A stretch of DNA of 64,000 nt from Vitrella brassicaformis CCMP3155 (lineage: Eukaryota; Protista; Chromerida): NCBI GenBank assembly GCA_001179505.1, contig CDMY01000613.1, positions 249,720-313,719 on the forward strand. Reading direction: 5' to 3'. Positions 28,131 to 43,200 of the stretch are shown piece after piece; within the stretch, counting starts at the first letter, position 1, and each line of letters opens with the position of its first letter. A program made the position numbers and the translations under genes. The notes beneath the pieces are model-generated. The model worked only from the letters and a program-made list of their open reading frames with translations. It searched no databases and was not told where the DNA came from.

Positions 28131-29196
28131 TTATGTCTCAAGTGGAGGCACGCCCAGCCCCGACTGCTCCCTTTGTATCTCGTCAAGCACCGCTTCGGCA
28201 TCGTCGTCTGCCTTCGGGATGACCTCCACGACCTGATCGAACGTGTAATTCGCCACGTCGTATTGCCACTTGATGAGCTCGGGATTGGCCAGCACTTCGG
28301 CAAGCTCGGCGCCCTGCTTGACGTAGACCGGCCCCTGGACGGTCTTGTCCTCATCAACAACGGCCGACGCGACGATCCCAGTGTTCTGGTTGAATGTCAC
28401 GACGCCCAGCTCTTCACTCGTCCCCTCAGGCGTGAGCTGCGGCGCATCTTCTCCTGTGGGGAACTCCAGACCCGCGAAGGAAGGGCTGGCCGGCAAATTC
28501 CCCATCATGTCGTCCGTCACGCCGAGAAAGGCTCCAAGGGCTGCCATGGAGTTGTCTCCCCCAGATGGGTTGAGAGGGGGAATGTTCTCCATGTCGATGA
28601 GGCCGATAAGGGAGGGACCCTCCTCCGAGATGAGCTCGAAGAAAGCCGCCAGTTCCTCGGGGGGAGGGATTGGCAGGTCTCCTGGTATTCCTGTCGGGAA
28701 TGGCGGCAAGTCGCCAAACCCTGGCGGGCCGCCGGGTGGGGTCGGAAATGGCAAGTCGCCAATGCCTGGCGGGCCAGGTGGCTCTTTCGCCCCCTCCTCT
28801 GGCAGCAGGCCCAGGGGGTCCTTGGGGAGGCCCTTCGAATCTTCCTTGGATGGTGGCCCTGGGGGGAAGAAATCTGGTGGCTCCTTGGCTGGCTCTTGTT
28901 CGGGGATGACGACGGCTTGCCAGCCAGCCGGCCGCCTTGCGCTTTCGCCGCGCCCCAGCCTCCGCCTCCTTGCCGGTCTCGCTGATTGTTGTGGAAGCAG
29001 GGAAGGCTCGTTGCTCTGCAGAAGCTTGTTGAGGAAGTCCGGGCATTTGGCTTCCAGCTTTGACCGAAGGGCTGGGATGGAGGGGTAGGTGACGAACCTC
29101 GTGTGGAGGCGGTACGGGACAACGCCGTCCCACCAACGGAGCTTGGGCAGCCTGAAACACAGGACGCCGCACGATAGGCCGCACTGACAGGAAGAC

Positions 29197-29229
<33 letters not shown>

Positions 29230-32200
29230 ATGAGAGGCACATACATACACACATACATACACACATACATACGGGGAAGGCAAGTCAAGTGTCATTGCTT
29301 GCAAGGCGGTCAATAGGTTGGTAAGTTTCTCCCTCTTTAGTGTCCCGTACCAGTTTGAAGTCGATTGCGGCTGTGACAGGGCATCCATCCTTGATGAGCT
29401 CGACGGGCGCGCACTTGTCATTGCTGGCTTGGTACTCAAGCGGCGCCTCCTCGCAGTGTGACCGCCTTGCGTACACGTGGTCCACCCACATCCAAGCGCT
29501 GCACTTTGGCCGCATGTTGACCTGCGATGCTTCGACTTGCAGCAGGCGCCTGCGTCTCCGTGCAGCGGGCTTGCTGTCCATGTAGTCGCTGAGGTACTGG
29601 GCACCAATCCTCGCCCCGTTGAGGAAGGTGACGGCGACCTTGCCGCCGATGTTGTCCACATCATCGACTGATTGGATGTTGAGCGCATCGTCGACGCCCT
29701 CATTGACAAAGTCGAGCCCCCCGTTGATCTGCGCCAGGAATGGGTAATCTTCGATCGGGTTGGCCCCTGGCTGCTGCATGACACCTTCTGAGAACTGATT
29801 CAGCAGCTGACCGGCACCAGTCATGGCCGCCTGGCCCTGGTCGGAGCCCAAGAACTCTGCCACCGCTGCCGCCTCTCCCAGGTAGCCGAGGTCGTCTCCC
29901 TCTCCGGTCTCGCCATTGGCCGCCTGCACAGTGACCTCCCACGTCGCCTCGCCCCTCACGGTCGTCGTGTCGTTGACAGTGGTCACCCAGCACCGACATA
30001 TGACATTGTTGTTTGCCCCTTGGTGGCGAAGCTCGTTCTCGTAGAGGATGGTGTCTCCCGTCCTGTATACTCGCATGCCGCAGCTGCCTTCGCCCTTGAA
30101 TATCGCTGTGGCGCAGACGTCCCCTCCGAAGTCGTTGGGGTCGGTGAAGATGTCGCTCCTCAGGGTCGCCTTGCACTGTTCGGTTCCGCTCAGATATGCA
30201 GGCCTGCGAAAAAAAGAAAGAAAGGAGCAAGACAGCCAGGAATGCTTTGCGTCATGTCTCGATGCCTAGCTTCCGCTGTATGAAAAGAACTGCGCTTACG
30301 CGAACGCGCCTTCGTATTGGCCGTTGAGGGCCACTAATGGAATGCAGCACTTCATGCCTTGATTGAAACACTCAACCTTCGGCCTGCCCGCTACACGCGC
30401 ATGCGCACACGAGATACAGACGAGAGAGAGACATGTACCAGCCAGAGTACCCATCTATGTGACATACATATATACGGCTGATCTCCTTTTGTCTGACTTA
30501 CATCCTGCGGGAGGCAGGCTCTCCAGTTTGAGGTTGGGGTCCTGGGCAGGCACAGGCAGCCGCTTGACCACGCCTGCGTCCCTCGCAACCAGTGCCAGCG
30601 AAGCCACCTGACCGACATCCACATACTTGGCGACTTCCATGCCCAGATTCAGACCAGTGGACAGCGCCTTTGAGCCAGTCGACAGAAGTGCGGGCAGATC
30701 CTGGGCGAAGGCACTGTCCCCAGCCAGGGCAGCAGGGAAGGTACCCAAGGGGAACGGGGCTGCGGCTCCAGGGAGGAAGATGCCACCGGCATTCGCCAGC
30801 CCCCCTGCCAGTCCCCCTGATGCCTGTTCGTTTTGTGCGCCTTGGTCGTTCTGGCACACCGCCGGACCGGACACGGTGCCTGGGGACGAAAACTGGCCGG
30901 TAGGGTTGCTGAAGAGGGTGCACTCGTTGGGCGGCCTGAACGAGAATTTGGTGCAAGCCACGGGAGTCAAGGTCTGCTCGCAGACGGCCTGGCAGGCGGC
31001 TGCTGTGTTGAAAGCCGTCGGTCTGTCGATGACAGTGCCGCCGTCCAGTACAGTGTTGTCCGTAAAGCAGTTCACAGAACCTGACACGCGTAAGCAGACG
31101 CACCGCAGGCACGATGTCAAGTACGCCAGCCGATGAAGTTGTCTGCTTGCTCACCTTGTGGTGCGGCTCCATTCGCTGCGACAAGTGCGCTGAGCAATGC
31201 TGCAGCCGGATCGTTCTGCTGACCCACTTGCTGCCCCTGTCCGGCACTAATGGCGCCTGCCATTTGCCCCGCCAGCTGTGCACCGGCACCAATGATGTCA
31301 CCGATGGGGATCTCGCTGATGGGGATGCCCTGCAGGCGGCGTCTTCTTACGTCTCTGGCCGACTTTTTGCGCTGCTGGAAGTTGAACCAGGACTGTGCGT
31401 AGTCCTTGAAGAGAGGCATCGCGGGAACCTGGCCTGGCGTGAAGATGCGGCGGTTGCCGCTGAGGAGGGAGGCGAGAAGCATGTCGGGCGCTACCATGTC
31501 TCCGAGGGCCGCCTGAACCATGGCTGCTGTTCCAAGAACAGACGCCGTCGCCAGGCTGGTGCCTGTGTAGGTAGTCTGTTGGCCGGATGAGTCCAGGGTG
31601 AGCAGACTGCCAGGAGCCCACAGCACGTTCCGTGTGATGAAAGGTATGTTGGTGTAGTCTGTCGGCTTCCCAGTCGCCGCATCGATGGAGCACACACAGA
31701 GAAGGGCCGCACCGGGGACATCACAGAGGTTCCAGTCCAGGTAATTCTTGAGGCTGACTGGTGTCTTGGAGCCTTGCAGGGTGGGCAGTGGGGTCGACTG
31801 GAGCTGCGGCTGAATGCCTTCGTTGCCGCACGGGATGAAGAATACGTGGCCGAAGCGCGATGCCCTTTGCATGGCCGTCTTGAGGATGTGGGGTCCGGCT
31901 TTGGCCTGCTGTGACGAAGGGAACTCGCCGAACCCAAGGGCGAGGTAAGCCATCGATGCCCTCTGCTGAACAGAGTATTCGATGGCCGCCAGCACATCAG
32001 CAAGGTCGGCTCCGCCCTTCTCTTCGTCCCAGACTTTCAGCGGCATCGCGAGCGGCGCAATGCCAAAAAGCTTTGCATTGCAGCCAATGCCCTTCACCGA
32101 TGTGGTCGTGTCCTTGGTGTCGACCTTGCTGTCGCAGTTGCCGGCATAGAGCACTCCTGCCGCTGTGTCGTGGGTACCCACCCCGCTGGCGAGCGCCTTT

Positions 32201-33198
32201 GCTTCGCTGTAGCCGCTTCCGCCCTTCTGTGGAGGCTTTGTGAAGTCGTAGCCGACGAAGTCGTCCACGAATCCATTGCCGTCGTCGTCGATGCCATTGT
32301 GGGGGATTTCGCCATTATTGCGAAAGAAGACGTCACCGACCAGCTGGTCGGCCGGCCGGCCCTCCTGCTTTTCCACTTCAGCCGCCTCCTGCACATTGGC
32401 GACTCCCTCCCAAGACGCGCCTCCCAGCTCCCCCATTGACATGGGTGCCATGGCCTCGATGAAGAAGTCCATGCCCGTGCCGATAAAGGAACTGAGGACC
32501 CCCCGCTGTCGCCCGGGAGCTTGATCAGAGCTCGTCTCTGCTCGTCTAGCATATTCTGACCCCTGGTAGGCGTTGAGGACATCCTGTAGCGGACCGACCC
32601 CGCCGAAGAGCTCGTCAGTGGTCTGGCGGAACCATTGGAAGTCCATGCGCTCGGTTGTCTTTATGTCGCCGCTCGGCCCGTTGGGGCTGAGAAGGTTTCC
32701 CAAGAAGCCGCCTTGGGAGGCTTGCGTCTGGGAGATGCTGGTCATGAGGAAGGACGGCGTACACGTGACCATGTTCTGATAGGGCCTGAGCAAGTCCCTC
32801 AAACAAGCATACTGGGTCTCGTCTCGCACGCTGAAAAGCTCGATGCCAAGCGATGGGAGAAACTGGTTGCTGAATAGCTCTGGGCACAAAGCAATGCGCC
32901 CTCGCCATGCTGACATGAGGTCGTCCAGCAGGCTTACGCGATTGGCGTCGAGGTTGCGTTGTAAGCCGTCGTTGAATAGGCAGATGACGCGCCTTAGCGG
33001 GCCCTGGGAGCCTCCTTTGGACGGTTTGGGACCCTCTTGTGTGCCAGAGGTATCTCTGCCCGGCGGGAACGGGCCACCGAATACGGGCGGGGATGGCGAT
33101 GGAGGCCGCAACGGGAAGAGTTGCCCTGTCGCCGTGATGAACAGACAGAGCGACGCAAGTGTCAGCAGGCAGACACGGGAGCCCGAGGAAGCAGTCAT
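28131..33198 (-). CDS. Secreted 1539-aa multidomain protein: prodomain + degenerate S8 subtilase + PAN/Apple + ZP-N-like + ZP-C-like + Pro/Gly-rich tail
   Basis: Manual model with exons 33198-31155, 31080-30502, 30390-30300, 30203-29351 and 29183-28131 (4620 nt, phases 1,1,2,0, all consistent, all GT-AG). Signal peptide MTASSGSRVCLLTLASLCLFITATG-Q. The ORF track extends upstream to 33306. Confidence 0.75.
29070..29660 (-). other. ZP-C-like domain
   Basis: NIGGKVAVTF ... NMRPKCSAW ... VELIKDGCP (29378-29398) ... FRLPKLRW ... YRLHTRFV, resembling the ZP-C motifs CxA, LIxxGCP and FxFxxF. It is interrupted by an RRRRRLLQ loop. Confidence 0.55.
29984..30383 (-). other. ZP-N-like domain (split over exons 3 and 4)
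   Basis: Spliced sequence PKVECFNQGMKCCIP...AYLSGTEQC...FKGEGSCGMRVYRTGDTILYENEL...VICRCWV. It reproduces the ZP-N spacing V-x-C...m, Y-L...C, C-G...I-x-Y-x-N-x-L, C-x-aromatic. Confidence 0.65.
30854..31077 (-). other. PAN/Apple domain
   Basis: Six-Cys pattern VNCF..TAAACQAVCE..VACTKFSF..NECTLFS..SGPAVC, including the C-x3-C core and terminal SGPxxC typical of apple domains. Confidence 0.85.
31400..32500 (-). other. Peptidase S8 (subtilisin-like) domain, apicomplexan SUB1/bacterial type
   Basis: Ca-binding insert NGEIPHNGIDDDGNGFVDDFVGYDF; His motif THDTAAAGVL; AMPLKV; LAAIEYS; oxyanion Asn CGNEG; Ser motif GTSLATASVLGTAA. The Asp motif reads FIGTGMD instead of IDTGxD. Confidence 0.85.
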
Positions 33199-37200: not shown

Positions 37201-40200
37201 TACTGCGTATGGCGTTCTGCCCGGGCGGCATATGTGTCACGTCAAAGACGGTAGTGCCGAAGTTGAGGCTTAACGGGAAGGACTCTGGCAGGGCGAGATC
37301 TAGAGTTGAGACAATGCCAAGTCCGGTCCGGCCGGGGGGAGGATCACCGAACTGAATCTTGTCCAGTGAGGCGCTGGATAGGTCAATGGACCCAGCGTCG
37401 TCTCCCAACAAGGGCAAAATAGTCTCAAGAGGCATTTTTCCGATAGGCAGGGTGCCAAGAATGCTGCCAACCGTCACTGCGGCTGCACCGACAAGCTGCA
37501 GCGTAAGCTGCTGTGCTGACGGCCGGTCTTCCGATAGTAGCAACTTGACCAGGTCGGCAAATGCCTTGCCGTCTTCCTCTACCTTCAGTGTGCCCTCAAA
37601 CTCCCAGCGGATGTTGAGATGGTTTGTGTTGACGCCTGTCTCCCTGTTCATGAGCACTGCAGTCTGTGGTGGCACACGAAGAACGCCGATCTTCTTGCCA
37701 TTTGGCCCTTGAAGATTGCCATTGATGGCGAGCTCTTGCACATCGAGACGGGAATCTGGCCCAAGCGGATCTCTGACCCTAACCACTAGGGCCCCCCTGA
37801 GCTGCACATCGTCGTCCCCAACAGGCTCCAAGCTCAGAGACGAGGCGTCTACCGACTCGACAAGGGAGTCGCCACCCAAGATGCTGAAACACGAGAAGGA
37901 AGGAATGAAGTGTTCCATGTACCATTGAGACTGATCAGCTCACCCAGTAGTCGGCATGGATAATGCGACGCCACTGAGCACCCGGGTCAGCCAAACAGGC
38001 GGTCTCTGCCTCATGGACCTTGGCATGATTTTTATCGTCGCCATGTCATCGCTGCCGAAGAGCGCATTCACCAGCTCGCCAAAGAATGCCTCAGAGTCCA
38101 CCCCCTGGGGCGACTGCAGCATGCCCCTGACCTCCAGACGCGACTCCTTTGGCGCTGGCGCCAGGTTGGTTTCCATTGTTCTGAAATCGCCTATCCTTTG
38201 CGTGGTCCCGCCGACGTCCCGCTGTACAATCCACTGCATATCGGCAAGTCCCAGGCCAATTGGCGCAGGATTGCGGATAGTCAGTGCCACCGAGATCACC
38301 ATTCCGTTCGCACTCTCGCCGGACTGCTGCAATGACCGCGGCCCGCCTTCTTGTGGCTGAGGTTGCAAAAAGCCTGGTGCGATGGGAGTATCGGAGCCCG
38401 AGGGGAAGAGAAATTCCTCGATCGTCAGATTGTGCATCTCGAACAGAGACGTGGCGGCATCTCCCTCGTCTCCTGAGCCCCCCATGGACAGCTCCCTATC
38501 GATCTCCACTTCGCCCAATTGCAAGCGGCCTAATGGGGTGTCGACAGTAGCATCTATCCTCCCGACTAACCGAACAACATCAACAGTGCCAGATGATGTC
38601 TCCTCGCCGACAGAATCGAAGATCCTCTGTTTGAAGGTCACGAAAGTGTCGAGATCGTCCACTACGAGGGGGACGGAGAGCGGGACCGTCACGGCAAGTC
38701 GGCTAGAGCCATCACTCTGAAGGAGACACAATGAGGCAGATGAAGTCCCGCCTTCTGTCGGAGGGTTTCTGCTTACACCATTGACGTATCTCCTATCCTC
38801 CGTCTTGACGGGTGGAGACTCGATCCTCCCTAACACAGGCGCATCGTTTCTTGCTCCATTCACCAGTGAAAGAGACATCGCCACAGATTCGATCACAATG
38901 TCCTGAGATGAGCCCAAAGGGTTGTTGATCACGACGTCAAATGAGCCCTCCATGGGAATGGCAGACAGCTCAGCACCGTCCTGCACTTCGTCGAAGCGCA
39001 AATACAAGTCCTGGGTCTCAACCGATTCAATCAATTCTCCCCCACGGATAGACTCCGTCAAGCTGTCTAGGCTGAACGAAGAATTCCCCGCACAAATGAA
39101 GCCAGGAGACAGACAGATCACGAGGTGTATGGAATGACATGCGTCTCTTATGACCTTGTCATGGTCGTATCGAATTTCACGCCCTCCGCTACTTTCGTCA
39201 CCCAGGCCGGCAGCATCTCTTGTTCCCCGCTACTGGTCCCGACAGGGTAGCCTAGTCGCACCCCTTCCAGTCCAATTCTCAAAGGGGTGGCTGCCAGAGC
39301 CGCCTGTATCAACTCCTGAGCTTGCCTCTCGTTGGCCTCTGTGCGCCATAGGTAGCCCCTAAGCCGCACTTGGTTGTCGCCCGGCTCGAGTACAAAAGGT
39401 GTGTTAATCTCCAGTGCACCGACGTCTTGGTTGCCATATCTCAATGCGCCCAACAGGGTCAGTTTGCCGAAGTCGATCGTCAACGCGAGGGTTGACGTCA
39501 GTGTGATGGCAATCTCTGTCGCAAGCTTGCTCTGAAGGACCGCCACTCTGCCGTATTCCCCAAAAACATTCGCCATTTCGAGGGCCGTAAGGTTGTCGAA
39601 GTCCTCGACGAGACGAAAGTCATCCACACTGACCTGAAGGCTTTCTTTTTGCTGACCATCCTCTGCCTCGCCAGACAGATCGAAATTTGAAGTTACACGT
39701 AATCCGTCGAGGTTCAGCCGGCCCAGTGGAGTCTGCACGTCGACTCTGGCACTACCTTGGATGCCAAGAGGGGCGGCAATCGTGGTCGTACGCTCCATGA
39801 GGCTGCTGACAGTATCGGCAAATAGCGATCCATCTCCCGTGGGGCTGAGAATGCCCTGCAGGGGGAAATCAAGACGGATCTTGCCGTTGTCGAGCACCTG
39901 CATGGACCGACCGACACACAAACTGGACACACTTCCATCCTACAATGTCAGATTGTTATCGGTGTCAGTTCACAACTCGCCTTCTGTTCGATCGCAAGGA
40001 TCTTCGTCTGCTGTTTGACTTCAGCGAAGCACTCCCCGCGTCTCGACAGTAGATTAGCACTCAACTCGAGGTTTTCGACCGTCACGGGCGACCGTTCCCC
40101 CAACGGGTTGACAATGATTACCCCCACCTCAGCTACAACACTTATGGCTCGCTGTGGCTCTGTCAGGCCTCCTAGATCAGCCTGGAGACCGCGTATCGAC

Positions 40201-43200
40201 ACGTCCTCGACCAATTCACCTCCACCCGTCAAATCGCTCAGTGGGGGAAGCTTCGTCTCGATGGCCACCGTGCTCAATGCCTCCTCAAGCCACTTCGGCG
40301 GCCCTCTTTCTTGCACAAAGGGCACTGTCTTGACGATCACGGGAAGATTGCCGCCTTTGACATACTCGCTGAAACGCCGAGACACAACGGCTAGGTCCGA
40401 GGCTGCCGGGTTGAGTCTCCCGGTGAGCTTGATGGGCGTCCTGCCTGGGCGCAGGTAGACCGCTCTTGCCTGCACGATGCCAAGCAGCACAGCCAAAGCC
40501 CGTGCCTGCAGCAGACGTCTGGCGGGATTGGCAGGGCCAGCGTCACTGGAAGGTGGCAGGTACAGTTCGAAGGAGAGGTCACCCAAATATAGCGATGCCT
40601 CCGATGGGTTGAGGATGTCTGCCGTCGCCGAGATAGCAAGTCCCTGATCGTCCGGCGGTGGCCCCTCAAAGACGAACGAATTCAGGTCGACCGATATGCC
40701 CTCGCTCTCCTGGCTGCCCATTGGGAGTGTCATATCGAGAGGTATGGCCGACAGCTGCAGGGGAATATCAAAGTATGTCCGATCCCCATCGTCATTGACA
40801 GTGGCGCTGACGTCGATGTTCATTTCCGCCGTTCCACTCATCCGCAGCAAGGCATAACCCTCCCGAGCAAGGTCGGACACGAAAGCTGCGAACGGTATGG
40901 TCAGGCCTGGCTCGCGAAGGGCTGCATTGTCCAATGCGAGAGCCTCCCTCTCGAGAGTGATGGTGTCATTGATCTGGAAAAGCAGTCTGAGCTTGTCGTT
41001 GCCGTCCACTTGCTTAACCTCTTGGACTAGAGGAGCGCGGCTAGAGAGAATCAGGCGACCGATGGTGAATGAGGGAGAGTCCTCGCTCTCTCGATAATAG
41101 AGTGTGGAGTTGATGGAGACGTTGCGGACGGCGAAGGGCACGTCGGGGCCGAAGGGCCTGATGGCGGTGGCGTCAAGGACACCTGAGATGATGATGGTGT
41201 CTTCATCCACCGGCTCCAGCGACAGGTTGAGAACGTCCACATCTTCCAAGAGCTCATCGCCCAGGCCACTACGAGAAAAGACACACACACACACCAGAGG
41301 AGCATTTGTGTGTTCCTGATGAGTGTGTGACTACATCTTCAATTGGTGCGTACCCAGCCAGACTAAATTCCAATGCCAGCTGATCGACTATCGAACCCAG
41401 CCATGGAGGCATCTTCGTTTGCGTGCCTTGCTTGTCGTCATGGCCAGTCACTTGGATGGGCAGCGATCGACCCTGAAACAAACCTTGTACCAATCTGCTC
41501 ATCTCCTCCGGCACAGTAGACGCTTGCGCGTGCTCATCCGCCGCTATCGGACCTTCCAGGCGTAGCCGAGACACGTCTGGTGCTGGCACGATGGTGGGAG
41601 ACACCATCTTCAGATCGCCGCGAAGGGCCAGTGATTTGAGGTATACATGCAGCGGTAGATCCAGGTCATCGAATATCACGCCGAACTCCGAAGGGTTCGC
41701 TACAGCAACGTCAATCAAGACCTCCATCGTGAGGTCTTTCGTCGCATACGAGCCCCCCGGTCCCCGAAACGGCGATGACGGGTTGATCTCCAGCTTCGTG
41801 ACTTCGAACATGACGAGCTTAGGCCCTAGGCTGTCGAAGAGATTACCTGGCGGGAGGGATGTGACCTCGTCCACCGGCAGGTTGGAAAGGTCGAGGCGAC
41901 CAATGGGCGTATCGACGCTTGCTGATACATTGGCGTTGATAATCAGCCCGACAGGTGCATTCGAAGCTCTCCCACCGAACAGAGTGTCTGTGGCAAAGGA
42001 AACAATTGTGTCGCCGCTCCCGATAAGGACCATATCGCCGATGAGTGGCATGCGTATAGCCAGGTTGTCTGGTGTGCTGGCGTTCATCATGATGGCCTTG
42101 CTGGGGTATGTATTGACGCGCGTGAGAGGGCTGCCGTCGGACCCGCTGATGGTAGCGGCCAGACTGTAAGTCTCCACAATCACCTGCTGTCCTCGAAGGG
42201 GGTTCTGAATCTCGACGTCGAGGGTGATATTCAGTGCCAGCCGATCAGCGATCTCACTGATGGTGACAGTCACGCTGTCGTACTCGAGACTTTGCACCAG
42301 CTCTGAGACACAGCCCGCCGTCTCACTTGTCTTTTTGGTCAGCTCGCACAGGGGTGGAAGCGTGGTGATGGTCTCGAAGGAGGACACAGCGTCATAAAAC
42401 CATTGAGGCCGGCTTGGAATCCTCTCTGAAAAAGTCCACAGTGCGCCCTTCGGTGGCTGGACGATCGCCACTCGCAAAGACAGAGGCTCCTCGCGCAGAT
42501 AGGCTGAAAGCCCTTTAGAGACTGCAGGTAGGTCACTCTCGTCAGGCCTCAAGCGTCCCTCGAGAGCTAGTGTGTTGTTGCCTGGCATGATGTTGACATT
42601 GTACGCCACCAGGTAGCCGAGGAAAGCCGCGCTCTGGAGACGTCTCCCTCTCGACAACTGTGCATCGCCCTCCAGTGTGATTTCAAAGGCAAGGTCCCCC
42701 AGCGAGATTGACGCGTCTGAAGGGTTGATCAGCGTGGCGTTGGCAGCAAGGTCAAGTGCATCTTCCTTGCTGGTGGATACAAAGTCGAAAGCCGACAACT
42801 CGATCGCCAGACCTTTATCGGCCCCACCTTCGCCGGTGTTGCTTCCCAGGCCCGTGAGCTCCTGTGCTGTCTCGATGGTCAGGTTGGGAAGAATAAGTGG
42901 CCCCAGTGCGGTTTCCAGTCGCACTTCAGCGGCACCTTCCTTGATCAACATAGAGACCGACGGCTCAGTCAGGAATGCTCTGGTGAAGGCGCTGAAGGGC
43001 TTCCCATTCTCTGTTAGCGTCATAGTGCCATCGAGGTCGAACTCCAATGGCCTCTCAGCAGACAGGTGGCGGCCCGCGTATGGGTATCCAATATAGCTGG
43101 ACGTCTGCTTGACGATTAAGCTGGACGCAACGTACGGGCCATTGCCATTCAGCCAATCGTACTTGGACATGTCTGCCGCAAACACGCACTGGCAATGCAC

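What the first reader, a model, noticed from the sequence alone, without database searches (positions are those of the whole stretch)
28131..33198. Subtilase-PAN-ZP-like fusion: an apparent zona pellucida module in a non-animal (chromerid-like) secreted protein
Seen: a phase-consistent 5-exon model (1539 aa). A 91-nt exon absent from the ORF track supplies PKVECFNQGM, which continues as ..AYLSGTEQC..SCGMRVYRTGDTILYENEL..CRCW. Further on come CSAW, LIKDGCP and FRLPKLRW, all directly after a six-Cys PAN/Apple domain. Established: these motifs resemble the ZP-N (four Cys, conserved Y-x-N) and ZP-C (CxA, LIxxGCP) signatures. PAN-ZP proteins (Drosophila NompA, C. elegans NOAH-1 and LET-653) build animal apical matrices by filament polymerisation after proteolytic release. 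ZP modules are, to my knowledge, described essentially from animals. Inference: a self-contained wall or matrix filament precursor carrying its own subtilase-like module, implying either a much older origin of ZP or horizontal transfer or convergence.
Basis: partly seen in the sequence, partly recalled or inferred. Interest (0 to 1): 0.92.

Follow-up and report, generated by a model that had tools for sequence, protein, structure and literature searches.

The report
ZP-like module in a chromerid protein
A secreted protein of a Vitrella-like alga, with relatives across apicomplexan parasites, carries a two-part module predicted to fold like the zona pellucida (ZP) module that animals use to build egg coats and other extracellular filaments, a module so far regarded as animal-specific.

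Summary
The 5-exon minus-strand model (28131-33198, 1539 aa, all GT-AG) is reproduced exactly. Every junction is gap-free against an annotated Vitrella brassicaformis paralog (CEL97892.1) and collinear with its transcript.

The protein reads: signal peptide, subtilase-like domain, six-Cys PAN/Apple domain, ZP-N-like domain, a roughly 150-aa insert, ZP-C-like domain, then a C-terminal domain.

The ZP reading is supported by four results:
- The Pfam ZP-N hit has E=0.0046 but scores below the curated cut-off.
- Profile-profile comparison against ZP sequences from solved structures gives 90% probability for ZP-C (P=1.7e-6) and 24% for ZP-N (P=8e-4). Cross-controls give P of about 0.2.
- An AlphaFold2 model of the paralog is confident in both halves (pLDDT 70-95).
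- Its seven best Foldseek matches in the PDB are all ZP structures (ZPD filament 8.6e-6, uromodulin 2e-5).

The family is not contamination. It is found in chromerids, a colpodellid, gregarines, Cryptosporidium, coccidia and marosporidians.

Some canonical features are missing or unproven:
- Only the C-terminal half of ZP-C is detectable.
- The linker is about six times longer than in polymerising ZP modules.
- The window copy has no membrane anchor.
- The subtilase lacks its catalytic Asp, so self-processing is unlikely.

Filament formation is untested. I found no paper linking ZP to alveolates.

The parts
28131..33198 (-). Whole coding region, 5 exons, 1539 aa: exon 1 31155-33198, exon 2 30502-31080, exon 3 30300-30390, exon 4 29351-30203, exon 5 28131-29183
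   Evidence: Phase-consistent GT-AG model. Junctions are gap-free against paralog P0039 and collinear with transcript contig L002.
33124..33198 (-). Signal peptide (MTASSGSRVCLLTLASLCLFITATG)
   Evidence: Read from the sequence. The N-terminus is similar in paralog P0039. No predictor was run.
31399..32505 (-). Subtilase (S8)-like domain, probably catalytically impaired. Asp motif FIGTGMD (Gly in place of Asp), His region GVGTHDTAAG, Ser motif GTSLATA
   Evidence: Pfam Peptidase_S8 E=3e-5, 23.9 bits against a cut-off of 21.8, aa 347-568. PDB hit to deseasin MCP-01 E=8.8e-6 with the Ser motif aligned. The Asp and His assignments are by eye from motifs and family sequences.
31333..31350 (-). Polybasic VRRRRL site 1, between the S8-like and PAN domains
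   Evidence: Motif scan. Cleavage is inferred, not shown.
30851..31080 (-). PAN/Apple domain with six Cys
   Evidence: Pfam PAN_1 E=9e-4, 19.5 bits, below the 21.4 cut-off. The same domain in homologs passes the cut-off: 35.7, 38.7 and 25.8 bits.
29978..30388 (-). ZP-N-like domain (aa 876-980, spans intron 3) with 8 family-invariant Cys. Predicted strands A(VEC) B(GMKCCIP) C(..C) E(VCATA) E'(CGMRVY) F(ILYENEL) G(ICRCW)
   Evidence: Pfam ZP-N E=0.0046, 17.7 bits, below the 24.7 cut-off. hhalign against real ZP-N gives P=8e-4. AF2 pLDDT is mostly about 85-92 in the paralog, lower in the loops. Foldseek.
29909..29950 (-). Conserved beta-strand EATWEVTVQAANGE just after ZP-N. Candidate linker or IHP-like strand
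   Evidence: Family alignment. AF2 strand with pLDDT about 90. The role is inferred.
29543..29908 (-). Long interdomain insert, partly helical and low confidence, ending in the RRRRRL site 2 (29540-29560)
   Evidence: AF2 pLDDT below 50. An RRL or RxL motif recurs here in P0039, P0005, P0006 and P0007.
29001..29518 (-). ZP-C-like domain (aa 1134-1250, spans intron 4): KCSAW, LIKDGCP, FRLPKLRW (FXF-like), YRLHT (the C7 position is His here)
   Evidence: Family profile against PDB: the only hit is 28yj_A (chain labelled Uromodulin; entry title ZPD egg-coat filament), E=0.099. Pfam PF00100 E=0.0022 for the Selenidium homolog. hhalign 89.9%, P=1.7e-6. AF2 pLDDT 71-95. Foldseek betaglycan ZP-C hits.
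28959..28976 (-). PARRRR polybasic site 3, furin-type R-X-R-R, after ZP-C
   Evidence: Motif scan. The analogy to the ZP consensus cleavage site is an inference.
28899..28925 (-). Hydrophobic patch GWQAVVIPE, 12 aa after site 3. Weak EHP candidate
   Evidence: Read from the sequence. Conserved in the decayed copy P0002 but not in paralog P0039. Speculative.
28134..28424 (-). Conserved C-terminal domain of unknown fold family (VVTFNQNTG...EVIPKADDD...). No C-terminal hydrophobic tail
   Evidence: Aligned with homologs. AF2 gives a small alpha/beta unit with pLDDT 57-91. No Pfam hit.

Best explanation
The locus encodes a secreted multidomain glycoprotein of a Vitrella-type chromerid. It belongs to a family conserved across Myzozoa, that is chromerids, colpodellids and most apicomplexan lineages.

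Its architecture is: signal peptide, subtilase-like domain that has lost the catalytic Asp, PAN/Apple domain, ZP-N-like Ig sandwich, a roughly 150-aa variable insert, ZP-C-like domain, and a C-terminal domain. The ZP-N-like plus ZP-C-like pair is a highly divergent relative of the animal zona pellucida module.

What is shown computationally:
- the gene model;
- the domain order;
- fold-level and profile-level similarity of both halves to solved ZP modules;
- the wide myzozoan distribution.

What is inferred:
- The protein travels the secretory pathway.
- Host proteases cut it at the three RRRR(L) sites that lie exactly at domain boundaries. These would be furin/kexin-like, or ASP5/plasmepsin-V-like given the RRL motif.
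- The PAN domain binds a carbohydrate or protein ligand.
- The ZP-like module mediates homo- or hetero-oligomerisation at the cell surface or wall.

In the apicomplexan homologs a C-terminal hydrophobic tail (TM or GPI signal) would tether the precursor, as in animal ZP proteins. The Vitrella copies lack it and would be soluble or wall-bound.

I put the ZP-like fold and homology at about 0.75. I put true uromodulin-style filament polymerisation at about 0.3.
For: - Gene model.
- Domains: Pfam S8 above its cut-off, PAN and ZP-N below theirs. PAN passes the cut-off in homologs.
- Family: an exhaustive HMM search found 22 proteins. Those with names come from Vitrella, Chromera, Colpodella, Selenidium, Ancora, Porospora, Rhytidocystis, Cryptosporidium, Neospora, Besnoitia, Eimeria and Cardiosporidium. 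The full-length members (Vitrella, Cryptosporidium, Selenidium, Ancora, Rhytidocystis, Cardiosporidium) share the same domain order; other members carry only part of it.
- ZP-C: the family profile hits only one chain in the PDB, 28yj_A (labelled Uromodulin; entry title ZPD egg-coat filament). The aligned stretch runs from GCP through FSFxxFxF to the Cys. Pfam PF00100 gives E=0.0022 for the Selenidium member. hhalign gives 89.9%, P=1.7e-6.
- ZP-N: Pfam E=0.0024-0.0046 in 3 of 18 members. hhalign gives P=8e-4, with C2, the CG (C3) and the Tyr of the F strand in register.
- Controls: mismatched comparisons give P=0.17 and 0.25.
- Structure: the AF2 model with a 19-row alignment has pLDDT mostly about 85-92 for ZP-N and 71-95 for ZP-C. 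The top 7 Foldseek PDB hits are all ZP structures. Two of them span both domains (364 and 390 columns, E=8.6e-6 and 2e-5). Antibody and other Ig folds reach only E>0.15.
- Cleavage-site logic: three RRRRL motifs lie at domain borders, and an RRL motif recurs between ZP-N and ZP-C in homologs.
- C-terminal hydrophobic tails are visible in the Cryptosporidium, Ancora, Rhytidocystis and Cardiosporidium proteins.
Against: - No Pfam ZP model reaches its gathering score.
- The window protein itself has no PF00100 hit.
- The ZP-N profile finds no ZP chain in the PDB by HMMER.
- Only the C-terminal half of the ZP-C profile is matched (positions 69-132 of 133). The AF2 ZP-C-like unit has about 5 strands plus 2 helices, fewer than a full ZP-C.
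- Foldseek TM-scores are low (0.1-0.4) and identities are 9-12%.
- The structure is a prediction for the 64%-identical paralog, from a shallow alignment.
- The linker is about 150 aa, against 22-26 aa in polymerising ZP modules (PMC7737619).
- The C7-equivalent Cys is His in the window protein.
- There is no membrane anchor.
- The EHP candidate is not conserved in the paralog.
- No expression, localisation or biochemical data exist for any family member that I could find.
Confidence: 0.65

Rival explanations
1. The two domains are Ig-like, disulfide-rich beta-sandwiches that resemble ZP-N and ZP-C by convergence or by generic fold similarity. There is no common ancestry with the animal ZP module and no ZP-type assembly. 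The protein is simply a PAN-bearing adhesin.
For: All sequence hits are below curated thresholds. The ZP-N hhalign probability is only 24%. TM-scores are low and only half of ZP-C is matched. The linker length and the Cys pattern (8 Cys in the ZP-N-like domain, extra Cys in the ZP-C-like domain) are non-canonical.
Against: Both halves independently pick ZP as the best or only match, in the correct N-to-C order, with several methods. Cross-controls are null. Generic Ig folds score far worse in Foldseek. ZP-C-specific motifs (GCP, FXF, a Cys after the F strand) are in register.
Confidence: 0.2
2. One reading: a self-contained filament precursor whose own active subtilase domain releases the ZP module, which then polymerises like uromodulin or egg-coat proteins.
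For: The S8 domain is real. The Ser motif GTSLA and a possible His (THDTAAG) are retained in the Vitrella copies. Polybasic sites flank the ZP-like module. An RRRR site plus a hydrophobic patch follows ZP-C.
Against: The Asp motif is FIGTGMD in the window protein and xFIGTGFD-type family-wide. Apicomplexan homologs also lack His and Ser, so catalysis is not the conserved function. The linker is about six times longer than in polymerising ZP modules (PMC7737619). There is no membrane anchor, and anchoring is required for UMOD and ZP assembly (PMC7737619).
Confidence: 0.1
3. Artefact: a mis-spliced model, a pseudogene, or animal contamination of the assembly.
For: There is no RNA evidence for this exact copy. 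The exact 1539-aa sequence is not in the protein collection. A decayed paralog exists in V. brassicaformis (L001).
Against: The reading frame is intact with canonical splice sites. The junctions are conserved in an annotated paralog and its transcript. GC is about 0.6 throughout the window. The nearest DNA is Vitrella. Homologs occur in a dozen myzozoan genera and none came from animals.
Confidence: 0.03

Closest known systems
Animal ZP-module proteins, structurally uromodulin (PDB 4wrn, 6zs5) and the ZPD egg-coat filament (28yj)
   Same: N-to-C order of a ZP-N-like then a ZP-C-like Ig sandwich. In ZP-N: the VxC strand A, the C2, the CG (C3), a Tyr-containing F strand and the C in strand G. 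In ZP-C: GCP (C6), an FXF-type motif, and a Cys after the F strand in the apicomplexan members. A polybasic site lies after ZP-C. C-terminal hydrophobic tails occur in the apicomplexan members. These are the best Foldseek hits.
   Different: Sequence identity is 9-12% and scores fall below Pfam thresholds. There are 8 rather than 4 Cys in ZP-N. The insert is about 150 aa instead of a 22-26-aa linker. Only the second half of ZP-C is recognisable. There is no clear IHP or EHP. There is no anchor in the Vitrella copies. Polymerisation is untested. The organism is an alveolate, not a holozoan.
PAN-ZP apical matrix proteins of invertebrates (C. elegans LET-653 and NOAH-1/2, Drosophila NompA)
   Same: PAN/Apple domain(s) lie N-terminal to a ZP module in a secreted protein. 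This is from my own knowledge and from the abstract of PMC4970718.
   Different: No detectable sequence relationship was found: there were no animal hits at E<=1e-3. Here there is one PAN domain and an added subtilase-like N-terminal domain. Common ancestry of the architecture was not tested.
Betaglycan and endoglin (non-polymerising ZP modules)
   Same: The ZP-C-like domain matches the betaglycan ZP-C structures 4ajv, 3qw9 and 8dc0. Both have non-canonical linker lengths, and the betaglycan/endoglin modules are receptors, not filaments (PMC7737619).
   Different: Those proteins have minimal linkers, whereas this one has a very long one. No TGF-beta-type ligand context exists in alveolates.
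Subtilases of family S8 with the DDDGNGxxDD insert (for example deseasin MCP-01, PDB 3vv3)
   Same: NGEIPxNGIDDDGNGFVDD motif, Ser motif GTSxA, and a Pfam S8 score above the cut-off.
   Different: The catalytic Asp is replaced by Gly. The His position is uncertain. Apicomplexan orthologs have lost all three catalytic residues, so this is a pseudo-protease scaffold.
ZP-like domains reported in choanoflagellates (review PMC13361971)
   Same: A non-metazoan ZP-like sequence that lacks the full canonical features.
   Different: The present family is bipartite (both halves), lies far outside Holozoa in the SAR supergroup, and is conserved across a whole phylum-level clade.

Membership tests
ZP module (ZP-N PF23344 + ZP-C PF00100) | Scores above Pfam gathering thresholds | tested here: not met
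   ZP-N scores 17.7 bits (E=0.0046) against a cut-off of 24.7 for the window domain. The window has no PF00100 hit. The best family member scores 18.5 bits against a cut-off of 24.6.
ZP module (ZP-N PF23344 + ZP-C PF00100) | Bipartite architecture: ZP-N followed by ZP-C in one chain | tested here: met
   Both halves match their own ZP counterpart in the right order. hhalign gives P=8e-4 and P=1.7e-6, with null cross-controls. Foldseek alignments to 28yj_A and 4wrn_B span 364 and 390 columns. This rests on a predicted, not solved, structure of the paralog.
ZP module (ZP-N PF23344 + ZP-C PF00100) | Fold similarity to solved ZP modules | tested here: met
   The top 7 Foldseek PDB hits are all ZP structures, with E from 8.6e-6 to 0.07. 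Other folds have E>0.1. Domain pLDDT is mostly 70-95. TM-scores are low because most of the model is disordered.
ZP module (ZP-N PF23344 + ZP-C PF00100) | ZP-N Cys C1-C4 with C1-C4/C2-C3 disulfides | tested here: inconclusive
   Cys occur at the positions expected for C1 (VEC), C2 (TEQC), C3 (SCG) and C4 (CRC), and they are invariant in 18 sequences. Four extra invariant Cys are also present. Connectivity cannot be read from the tool output.
ZP module (ZP-N PF23344 + ZP-C PF00100) | ZP-C Cys C5-C8 and a full ZP-C sandwich including IHP (strand A) | tested here: inconclusive
   Apicomplexan members have Cys at the C5-, C6- (GCP), C7- and Ca/Cb-like positions. The window protein has His at the C7 position and lacks one upstream Cys. 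Only profile positions 69-132 of 133 are matched.
ZP module (ZP-N PF23344 + ZP-C PF00100) | Short interdomain linker (22-26 aa in polymerising members, PMC7737619) | tested here: not met
   About 150 aa separate CRCW (aa ~977) from KCSAW (aa ~1139) in the window protein, and 150-300 aa in homologs. AF2 gives low confidence here.
ZP module (ZP-N PF23344 + ZP-C PF00100) | Consensus cleavage site, EHP strand and membrane anchor after ZP-C | tested here: inconclusive
   PARRRR lies at aa 1259-1264 and GWQAVVIPE 12 aa later. The patch is absent in paralog P0039. The window protein has no C-terminal hydrophobic tail, whereas apicomplexan homologs do.
ZP module (ZP-N PF23344 + ZP-C PF00100) | Assembly into filaments | not testable with these tools
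   This needs expression, cleavage and EM.
Subtilase S8 | Pfam Peptidase_S8 above the gathering score | tested here: met
   23.9 bits against 21.8, E=3e-5. PDB hit to 3vv3, E=8.8e-6.
Subtilase S8 | Catalytic triad Asp-His-Ser | tested here: not met
   The Asp motif xIDTGxD reads FIGTGMD, and NAFIGTGFD-type in homologs. The His is ambiguous (GVGTHDTAAG). The Ser is kept (GTSLA, aligned). The Asp and His assignments are by eye, because the Pfam match starts at profile position 61.
PAN/Apple | Pfam PAN_1 score and six-Cys pattern | tested here: inconclusive
   The window scores 19.5 bits against a cut-off of 21.4, so it falls just short. Six Cys are present. The homologous segment passes in P0005 (35.7), P0016 (38.7) and P0007 (25.8).

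The most novel reading that the evidence does not exclude
The bipartite ZP polymerisation module is not an animal invention. A functional ZP-N/ZP-C module was already present in the common ancestor of chromerids and apicomplexans. It got there either by descent from a much older eukaryotic ancestor or by an ancient transfer between animals and their alveolate associates. These protists would then assemble ZP-type filaments or coats (cell wall, cyst or oocyst wall, or surface coat) after proteolytic release at RRRR sites.
Probability: 0.25. Interest if true: 0.92.

Novelty: new variant of a known kind. Interest (0 to 1): 0.8.

Why it matters
Current literature treats the canonical ZP module as conserved 'from hydra to humans' (PMC7737619) and as a metazoan synapomorphy. 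It reports only incomplete ZP-like domains in choanoflagellates and none in fungi or plants (PMC13361971).

A PAN-plus-ZP-like family conserved across chromerids, colpodellids, gregarines, Cryptosporidium and coccidia would move the module far outside Holozoa. It would reopen the question of where the module came from: deep ancestry, host-to-parasite-lineage transfer, or convergence.

It would also add an unrecognised extracellular module to the apicomplexan surface and adhesion repertoire. That includes uncharacterised genes in Cryptosporidium, Neospora and Besnoitia, which can be tagged and knocked out in existing systems.

Finally, it offers a natural test of which ZP features are needed for assembly. 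Here the linker is very long, the anchor is missing in the chromerid copies, and ZP-C is truncated.

Tried and rejected
- **First AF2 run.** The P0001 module with a 5-row alignment gave pLDDT 29.7 and was unusable. It was not used for Foldseek.
- **Restricted tools.** They refuse spliced window sequences. I therefore used the paralog fragment P0001 as the target, with window exon translations as extra alignment rows.
- **Word-indexed searches.** Two of the three searches, run with family alignments, returned nothing new. This was probably because low-complexity words dominated the candidates. Family membership therefore rests on the single exhaustive HMM search.
- **PDB profile search, whole module.** It gave only chance hits (flagellin, ketoreductase).
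- **PDB profile search, ZP-N.** It gave only a fibronectin-type-II-like chance match at E=0.75 in MMP2. I rejected this as composition (CxxxxxxxxCaTT).
- **hhalign against a 2-sequence UMOD/GP2 profile.** This was weak (12% and 4.5%). It improved only when ZP3 and ZPD sequences printed by the PDB tool were added.
- **Literature.** Five searches for ZP together with apicomplexans or chromerids, or for ZP outside animals, found no paper linking ZP to these groups. A sixth, for the locus tags, found nothing.
- **Exact look-up.** The 1539-aa model is not in the protein collection. I therefore cannot say whether the window is V. brassicaformis itself or a close relative.
- **Animal contamination.** I considered and rejected it (see rivals).

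Full report
**Observation**

The window is eukaryotic, with GC of about 0.55-0.63 throughout. The exons are 33198-31155, 31080-30502, 30390-30300 (91 nt), 30203-29351 and 29183-28131. They give 4620 nt and 1539 aa with a single terminal stop. The four GT-AG introns are 74, 111, 96 and 167 nt. All quoted peptides are there, and the PAN segment has six Cys.

The splicing is corroborated by relatives. A 1980-nt transcript-like JGI contig (L002) encodes P0001. It aligns to window exons 2, 3, 4 and 5, and its blocks end at, or within about 9 nt of, the proposed exon boundaries. P0001 sits in the same 90% cluster as CEL97892.1 (P0039), a 1652-aa annotated protein of Vitrella brassicaformis CCMP3155. 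That protein aligns without a gap across all four junctions and is 57% identical overall. It is therefore a full-length paralog.

A third copy lies on V. brassicaformis contig CDMY01000791.1 (L001). It is 83% identical in DNA to window 32290-28218, including intron 1. It has lost the stretch 30943-29948, which covers the PAN end and ZP-N, and it is annotated as three small genes. The window therefore comes from V. brassicaformis or a very close relative. The exact 1539-aa product is not in the protein collection.

**Domains**

- Pfam gives Peptidase_S8 above its curated cut-off (23.9 bits against 21.8; aa 347-568).
- PAN_1 falls just below its cut-off (19.5 against 21.4).
- ZP-N (PF23344) gives a sub-threshold hit covering YLSGTEQC...CRCW. 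Scanned as an isolated domain it scores E=0.0046 and 17.7 bits, against a cut-off of 24.7.
- Nothing is found in the C-terminal 350 aa.

**The family**

One exhaustive HMM search of 1.84 billion cluster representatives found 22 proteins at E<=1e-3, and none was from an animal. The query was a profile of the ZP-like region, built from the paralog plus window exon translations.

Source names place the hits in these organisms:
- chromerids and a colpodellid: Vitrella, Chromera velia (Cvel_6062), Colpodella angusta;
- gregarines: Selenidium, Ancora, Porospora;
- marosporidians: Rhytidocystis;
- Cryptosporidium canis, C. muris and C. serpentis;
- coccidia: Neospora caninum, Besnoitia besnoiti, Eimeria stiedai;
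- the nephromycid Cardiosporidium.

The full-length members (Vitrella, Cryptosporidium, Selenidium, Ancora, Rhytidocystis, Cardiosporidium) share the window's architecture. This runs from a degenerate S8-like region through PAN (above the Pfam cut-off in several) and a conserved helix to the ZP-N-like domain. The ZP-N-like domain reads 'VxC..GMxCCxP..C..lCaT..CG..E...iyqN.l...NNaiCxC' and has eight invariant Cys. It is followed by a conserved 'TWEyslQ' strand and a variable, partly helical insert.

Next comes a ZP-C-like domain reading 'CftPWPekCxaW.SeCE....C.Pv.LiexGCP...f.v.d..pG.lSFSFkpfxF....pfRv.C.y.L..C....C', then a C-terminal domain.

Members from Cryptosporidium, Ancora, Rhytidocystis and Cardiosporidium end in a hydrophobic tail (TM or GPI signal). 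The Vitrella proteins do not. Short proteins in Chromera and Colpodella carry only the ZP-N-like domain.

This distribution rules out contamination. It shows an old, conserved myzozoan family.

**Is it a ZP module? Sequence level**

*ZP-C-like half*
- The family profile finds exactly one chain in the whole PDB, 28yj_A. The sequence search labels it uromodulin; the Foldseek table gives the entry title as the ZPD egg-coat filament.
- That hit (E=0.099) aligns ELlEdGCP...sfsfkklkFsdg.pyrlaCrfkl to ELIEQGCPHDE..KFSFQMFQFVGYPKVFLHCRVRL.
- The Selenidium member hits Pfam PF00100 (ZP-C) at E=0.0022. The match covers profile positions 69-132 of 133 and scores below the cut-off.

*ZP-N-like half*
- Three of 18 ZP-N-like domains hit Pfam ZP-N, with a best E of 0.0024.
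- The family ZP-N profile finds no ZP chain in the PDB by HMMER.

*Profile-profile comparison*
- I built reference ZP alignments only from sequences printed by the PDB tool. These were human UMOD and GP2, chicken, mouse and fish ZP3, and a ZPD fragment.
- hhalign gives 89.9% probability (P=1.7e-6) for the family ZP-C-like domain against real ZP-C. The aligned stretch runs from GCP (C6) through the FXF motif to the next two Cys.
- It gives 24.4% (P=8e-4) for the ZP-N-like domain against real ZP-N. C2, the CG of C3 and the F-strand Tyr are in register.
- The two mismatched controls give 0.2-0.3% (P=0.17 and 0.25).
- The signal strengthened as real ZP sequences were added (compare). That is the behaviour expected of true similarity.

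**Is it a ZP module? Structure level**

A first AF2 run with 5 rows failed, with pLDDT 29.7. With the 19-row family alignment, the model of the paralog (P0001 residues 31-653) has two confident domains separated by disorder:
- ZP-N-like, residues 11-130, pLDDT mostly 85-92. It has strands at KIDC, GMKCCIP, TLS, DVCATAV, RVYDA, TKLYENELR and VICRCWLTK, plus the extra MSVKGEATW strand. I read this as the ZP-N strand order A-B-C-E-E'-F-G.
- ZP-C-like, residues 281-390, pLDDT 71-95. It has five strands and two C-terminal helices.

Foldseek against 350,542 PDB chains returns only ZP structures in the first seven places:
- ZPD egg-coat filament 28yj_A, E=8.6e-6, 364 aligned columns.
- Human uromodulin polymerisation region 4wrn_B, E=2.0e-5, 390 columns. 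These two span both domains.
- Two further 28yj chains, at about 1e-3.
- Three betaglycan ZP-C structures, E 0.05-0.07, about 92 columns, rmsd 5.4 A.

Antibody-type Ig domains appear only at E>0.15 with probabilities below 0.25.

TM-scores are low (0.1-0.4). More than half of the query is disordered and the relative domain orientation is arbitrary. I therefore rely on the local 3Di/amino-acid E-values, not on global superposition.

**What does not fit a canonical ZP module**

- No Pfam model reaches its gathering score.
- Only the second half of ZP-C is recognisable, and the predicted unit has fewer strands than a full ZP-C. I could not identify an IHP. The conserved TWEVTVQ strand is a candidate, but I cannot see where it packs.
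- The linker is about 150 aa here and longer in some homologs. [quoted passage not shown]
- In the window protein the C7-equivalent Cys is His (YRLHT against fRvgCky). One upstream Cys of the apicomplexan pattern is also missing.
- Three extra Cys (CGLSCGVLC) are Vitrella-specific.
- There is no C-terminal anchor. Membrane tethering is needed for UMOD and egg-coat assembly (PMC7737619).
- After ZP-C there is a furin-type PARRRR site followed 12 aa later by GWQAVVIPE, which looks like a cleavage-site-plus-EHP arrangement. The patch is conserved only in the decayed copy and not in the paralog.

**The subtilase-like domain**

It is a genuine S8 relative. It carries the NGIDDDGNGFVDD insert seen in deseasin-type enzymes and an aligned Ser motif, TYTGTSLATASV.

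The Asp motif reads FIGTGMD, where subtilases have xIDTGxD. The same Gly is found in the paralog and, as NAFIGTGFD-type motifs, in the homologs.

The His region (GVGTHDTAAG; GSHDTAAG in the paralog) could retain a His if one allows a one-residue shift. Apicomplexan homologs have Gln or Glu there, and Gly, Tyr or Ala at the Ser position.

These assignments are by eye, because the Pfam match begins at profile position 61. I read the domain as a pseudo-protease scaffold. At best it is a crippled enzyme in Vitrella.

**Likely mechanism**

*Shown computationally:* a signal peptide, extracellular-type Cys-rich domains, and a conserved modular order.

*Inferred:* three RRRR(L) motifs sit at the domain borders. 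They lie after S8 (aa 617-622), between ZP-N and ZP-C (1120-1126), and after ZP-C (1259-1264). An RRL or RxL motif recurs between ZP-N and ZP-C in the paralog and in Selenidium, Ancora and Rhytidocystis. Similar motifs occur downstream of the ZP-N-like domain in the short forms.

This suggests processing by a furin/kexin-type enzyme, or by an ASP5/plasmepsin-V-type enzyme. The RRLxx resemblance rests on my own knowledge and is untested. PAN would supply ligand binding, and the ZP-like pair would supply self-association.

Whether this gives filaments, as in uromodulin, or a non-polymerising receptor or adhesin, as in betaglycan, cannot be decided here. I put filaments at about 0.3.

**Comparison with what is known, and novelty**

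The closest structures are uromodulin and ZPD. The closest architectures are the invertebrate PAN-ZP matrix proteins (LET-653, NOAH-1/2, NompA), but no sequence link to them was found.

The literature I could search describes the ZP module as conserved from hydra to humans (PMC7737619) and as a metazoan synapomorphy. It reports only incomplete ZP-like domains in choanoflagellates and none in fungi or plants (PMC13361971). Five searches for ZP together with apicomplexan or chromerid terms, or for ZP outside animals, found no paper linking ZP to these groups. A sixth, for the locus tags, found nothing. The chromerid genome paper does not contain the phrase. The searchable library is incomplete, so prior description elsewhere cannot be excluded.

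I classify this as a new variant of a known kind: a divergent, bipartite ZP-like module in a myzozoan-wide PAN/pseudo-subtilase family.

**Verdict**

- The core interpretation, a ZP-like module in a non-animal protein, is supported at the level that computation allows (about 0.75).
- The functional inferences, a self-processing protease and a filament precursor, are not supported or remain untested.
- Interest is high, because a specialist would not expect this module in alveolates and the claim is directly testable with existing genetic systems.

Noticed in passing
L001 5017-7728 (V. brassicaformis CCMP3155 CDMY01000791.1), matching window 32290-28218: A decayed paralog of the window gene. 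It is 83% identical in DNA, including intron 1, but has a deletion equivalent to window 30943-29948 (PAN end plus ZP-N-like domain). It is annotated as three small genes of 191, 108 and 313 aa; the last is P0002/CEM33778.1.
   Followed up: partly
window 31333-31350, 29540-29560, 28959-28976; P0039, P0005, P0006, P0007, P0008, P0009: RRRR(L) or RRL motifs recur at the domain boundaries of the window protein. They also recur between the ZP-N-like and ZP-C-like domains of several homologs. They resemble furin-type sites and the apicomplexan RRLxx/RxLxE export-type motifs. No cleavage evidence is available.
   Followed up: partly
P0038 (Chromera velia Cvel_6062), P0009 (Colpodella angusta), P0008, P0010, P0011, P0020: These short secreted proteins carry only the ZP-N-like domain, with a shifted first Cys (GQCY...GGxTCCIP), followed by a Ser/Ala/Thr-rich region. 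They have no PAN, S8 or ZP-C-like parts. This suggests the ZP-N-like unit is an independent module in these lineages.
   Followed up: no
window 29184-29350 (intron 4): The intron is largely made of simple TGTA/TGTG and TGTC repeats (gtatgtatgtgtgtatg..., then ctgtctgtctgtctgtc...).
   Followed up: no
window 39948-43200 (-): Two adjacent long ORFs (448 and 643 aa) both hit Pfam DUF3712, with E=0.001 and E=3.9e-8. They are probably exons of one large gene. Eight other long ORFs tested across the window had no Pfam hit.
   Followed up: no
P0031 (Cryptosporidium canis KAJ1611660.1, 2338 aa): This gene model appears to fuse the family member with the neighbouring TRAPP subunit 5 / '41-2 antigen' gene. 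The fusion drags short TRAPP proteins into the same 90% cluster.
   Followed up: no
P0015 (Besnoitia BESB_010910), P0021 and P0035 (Neospora caninum): The coccidian models end shortly after the ZP-N-like domain and its helical region (...GHVLEHASSRGARK) and have no ZP-C-like part. Either the coccidian genes truly lack it or the annotations are truncated.
   Followed up: no
The word-indexed protein search, given family alignments, failed to return even proteins known to be in the collection (P0003, P0005 and others). Absence of hits from that tool should not be read as absence of relatives.
   Followed up: no
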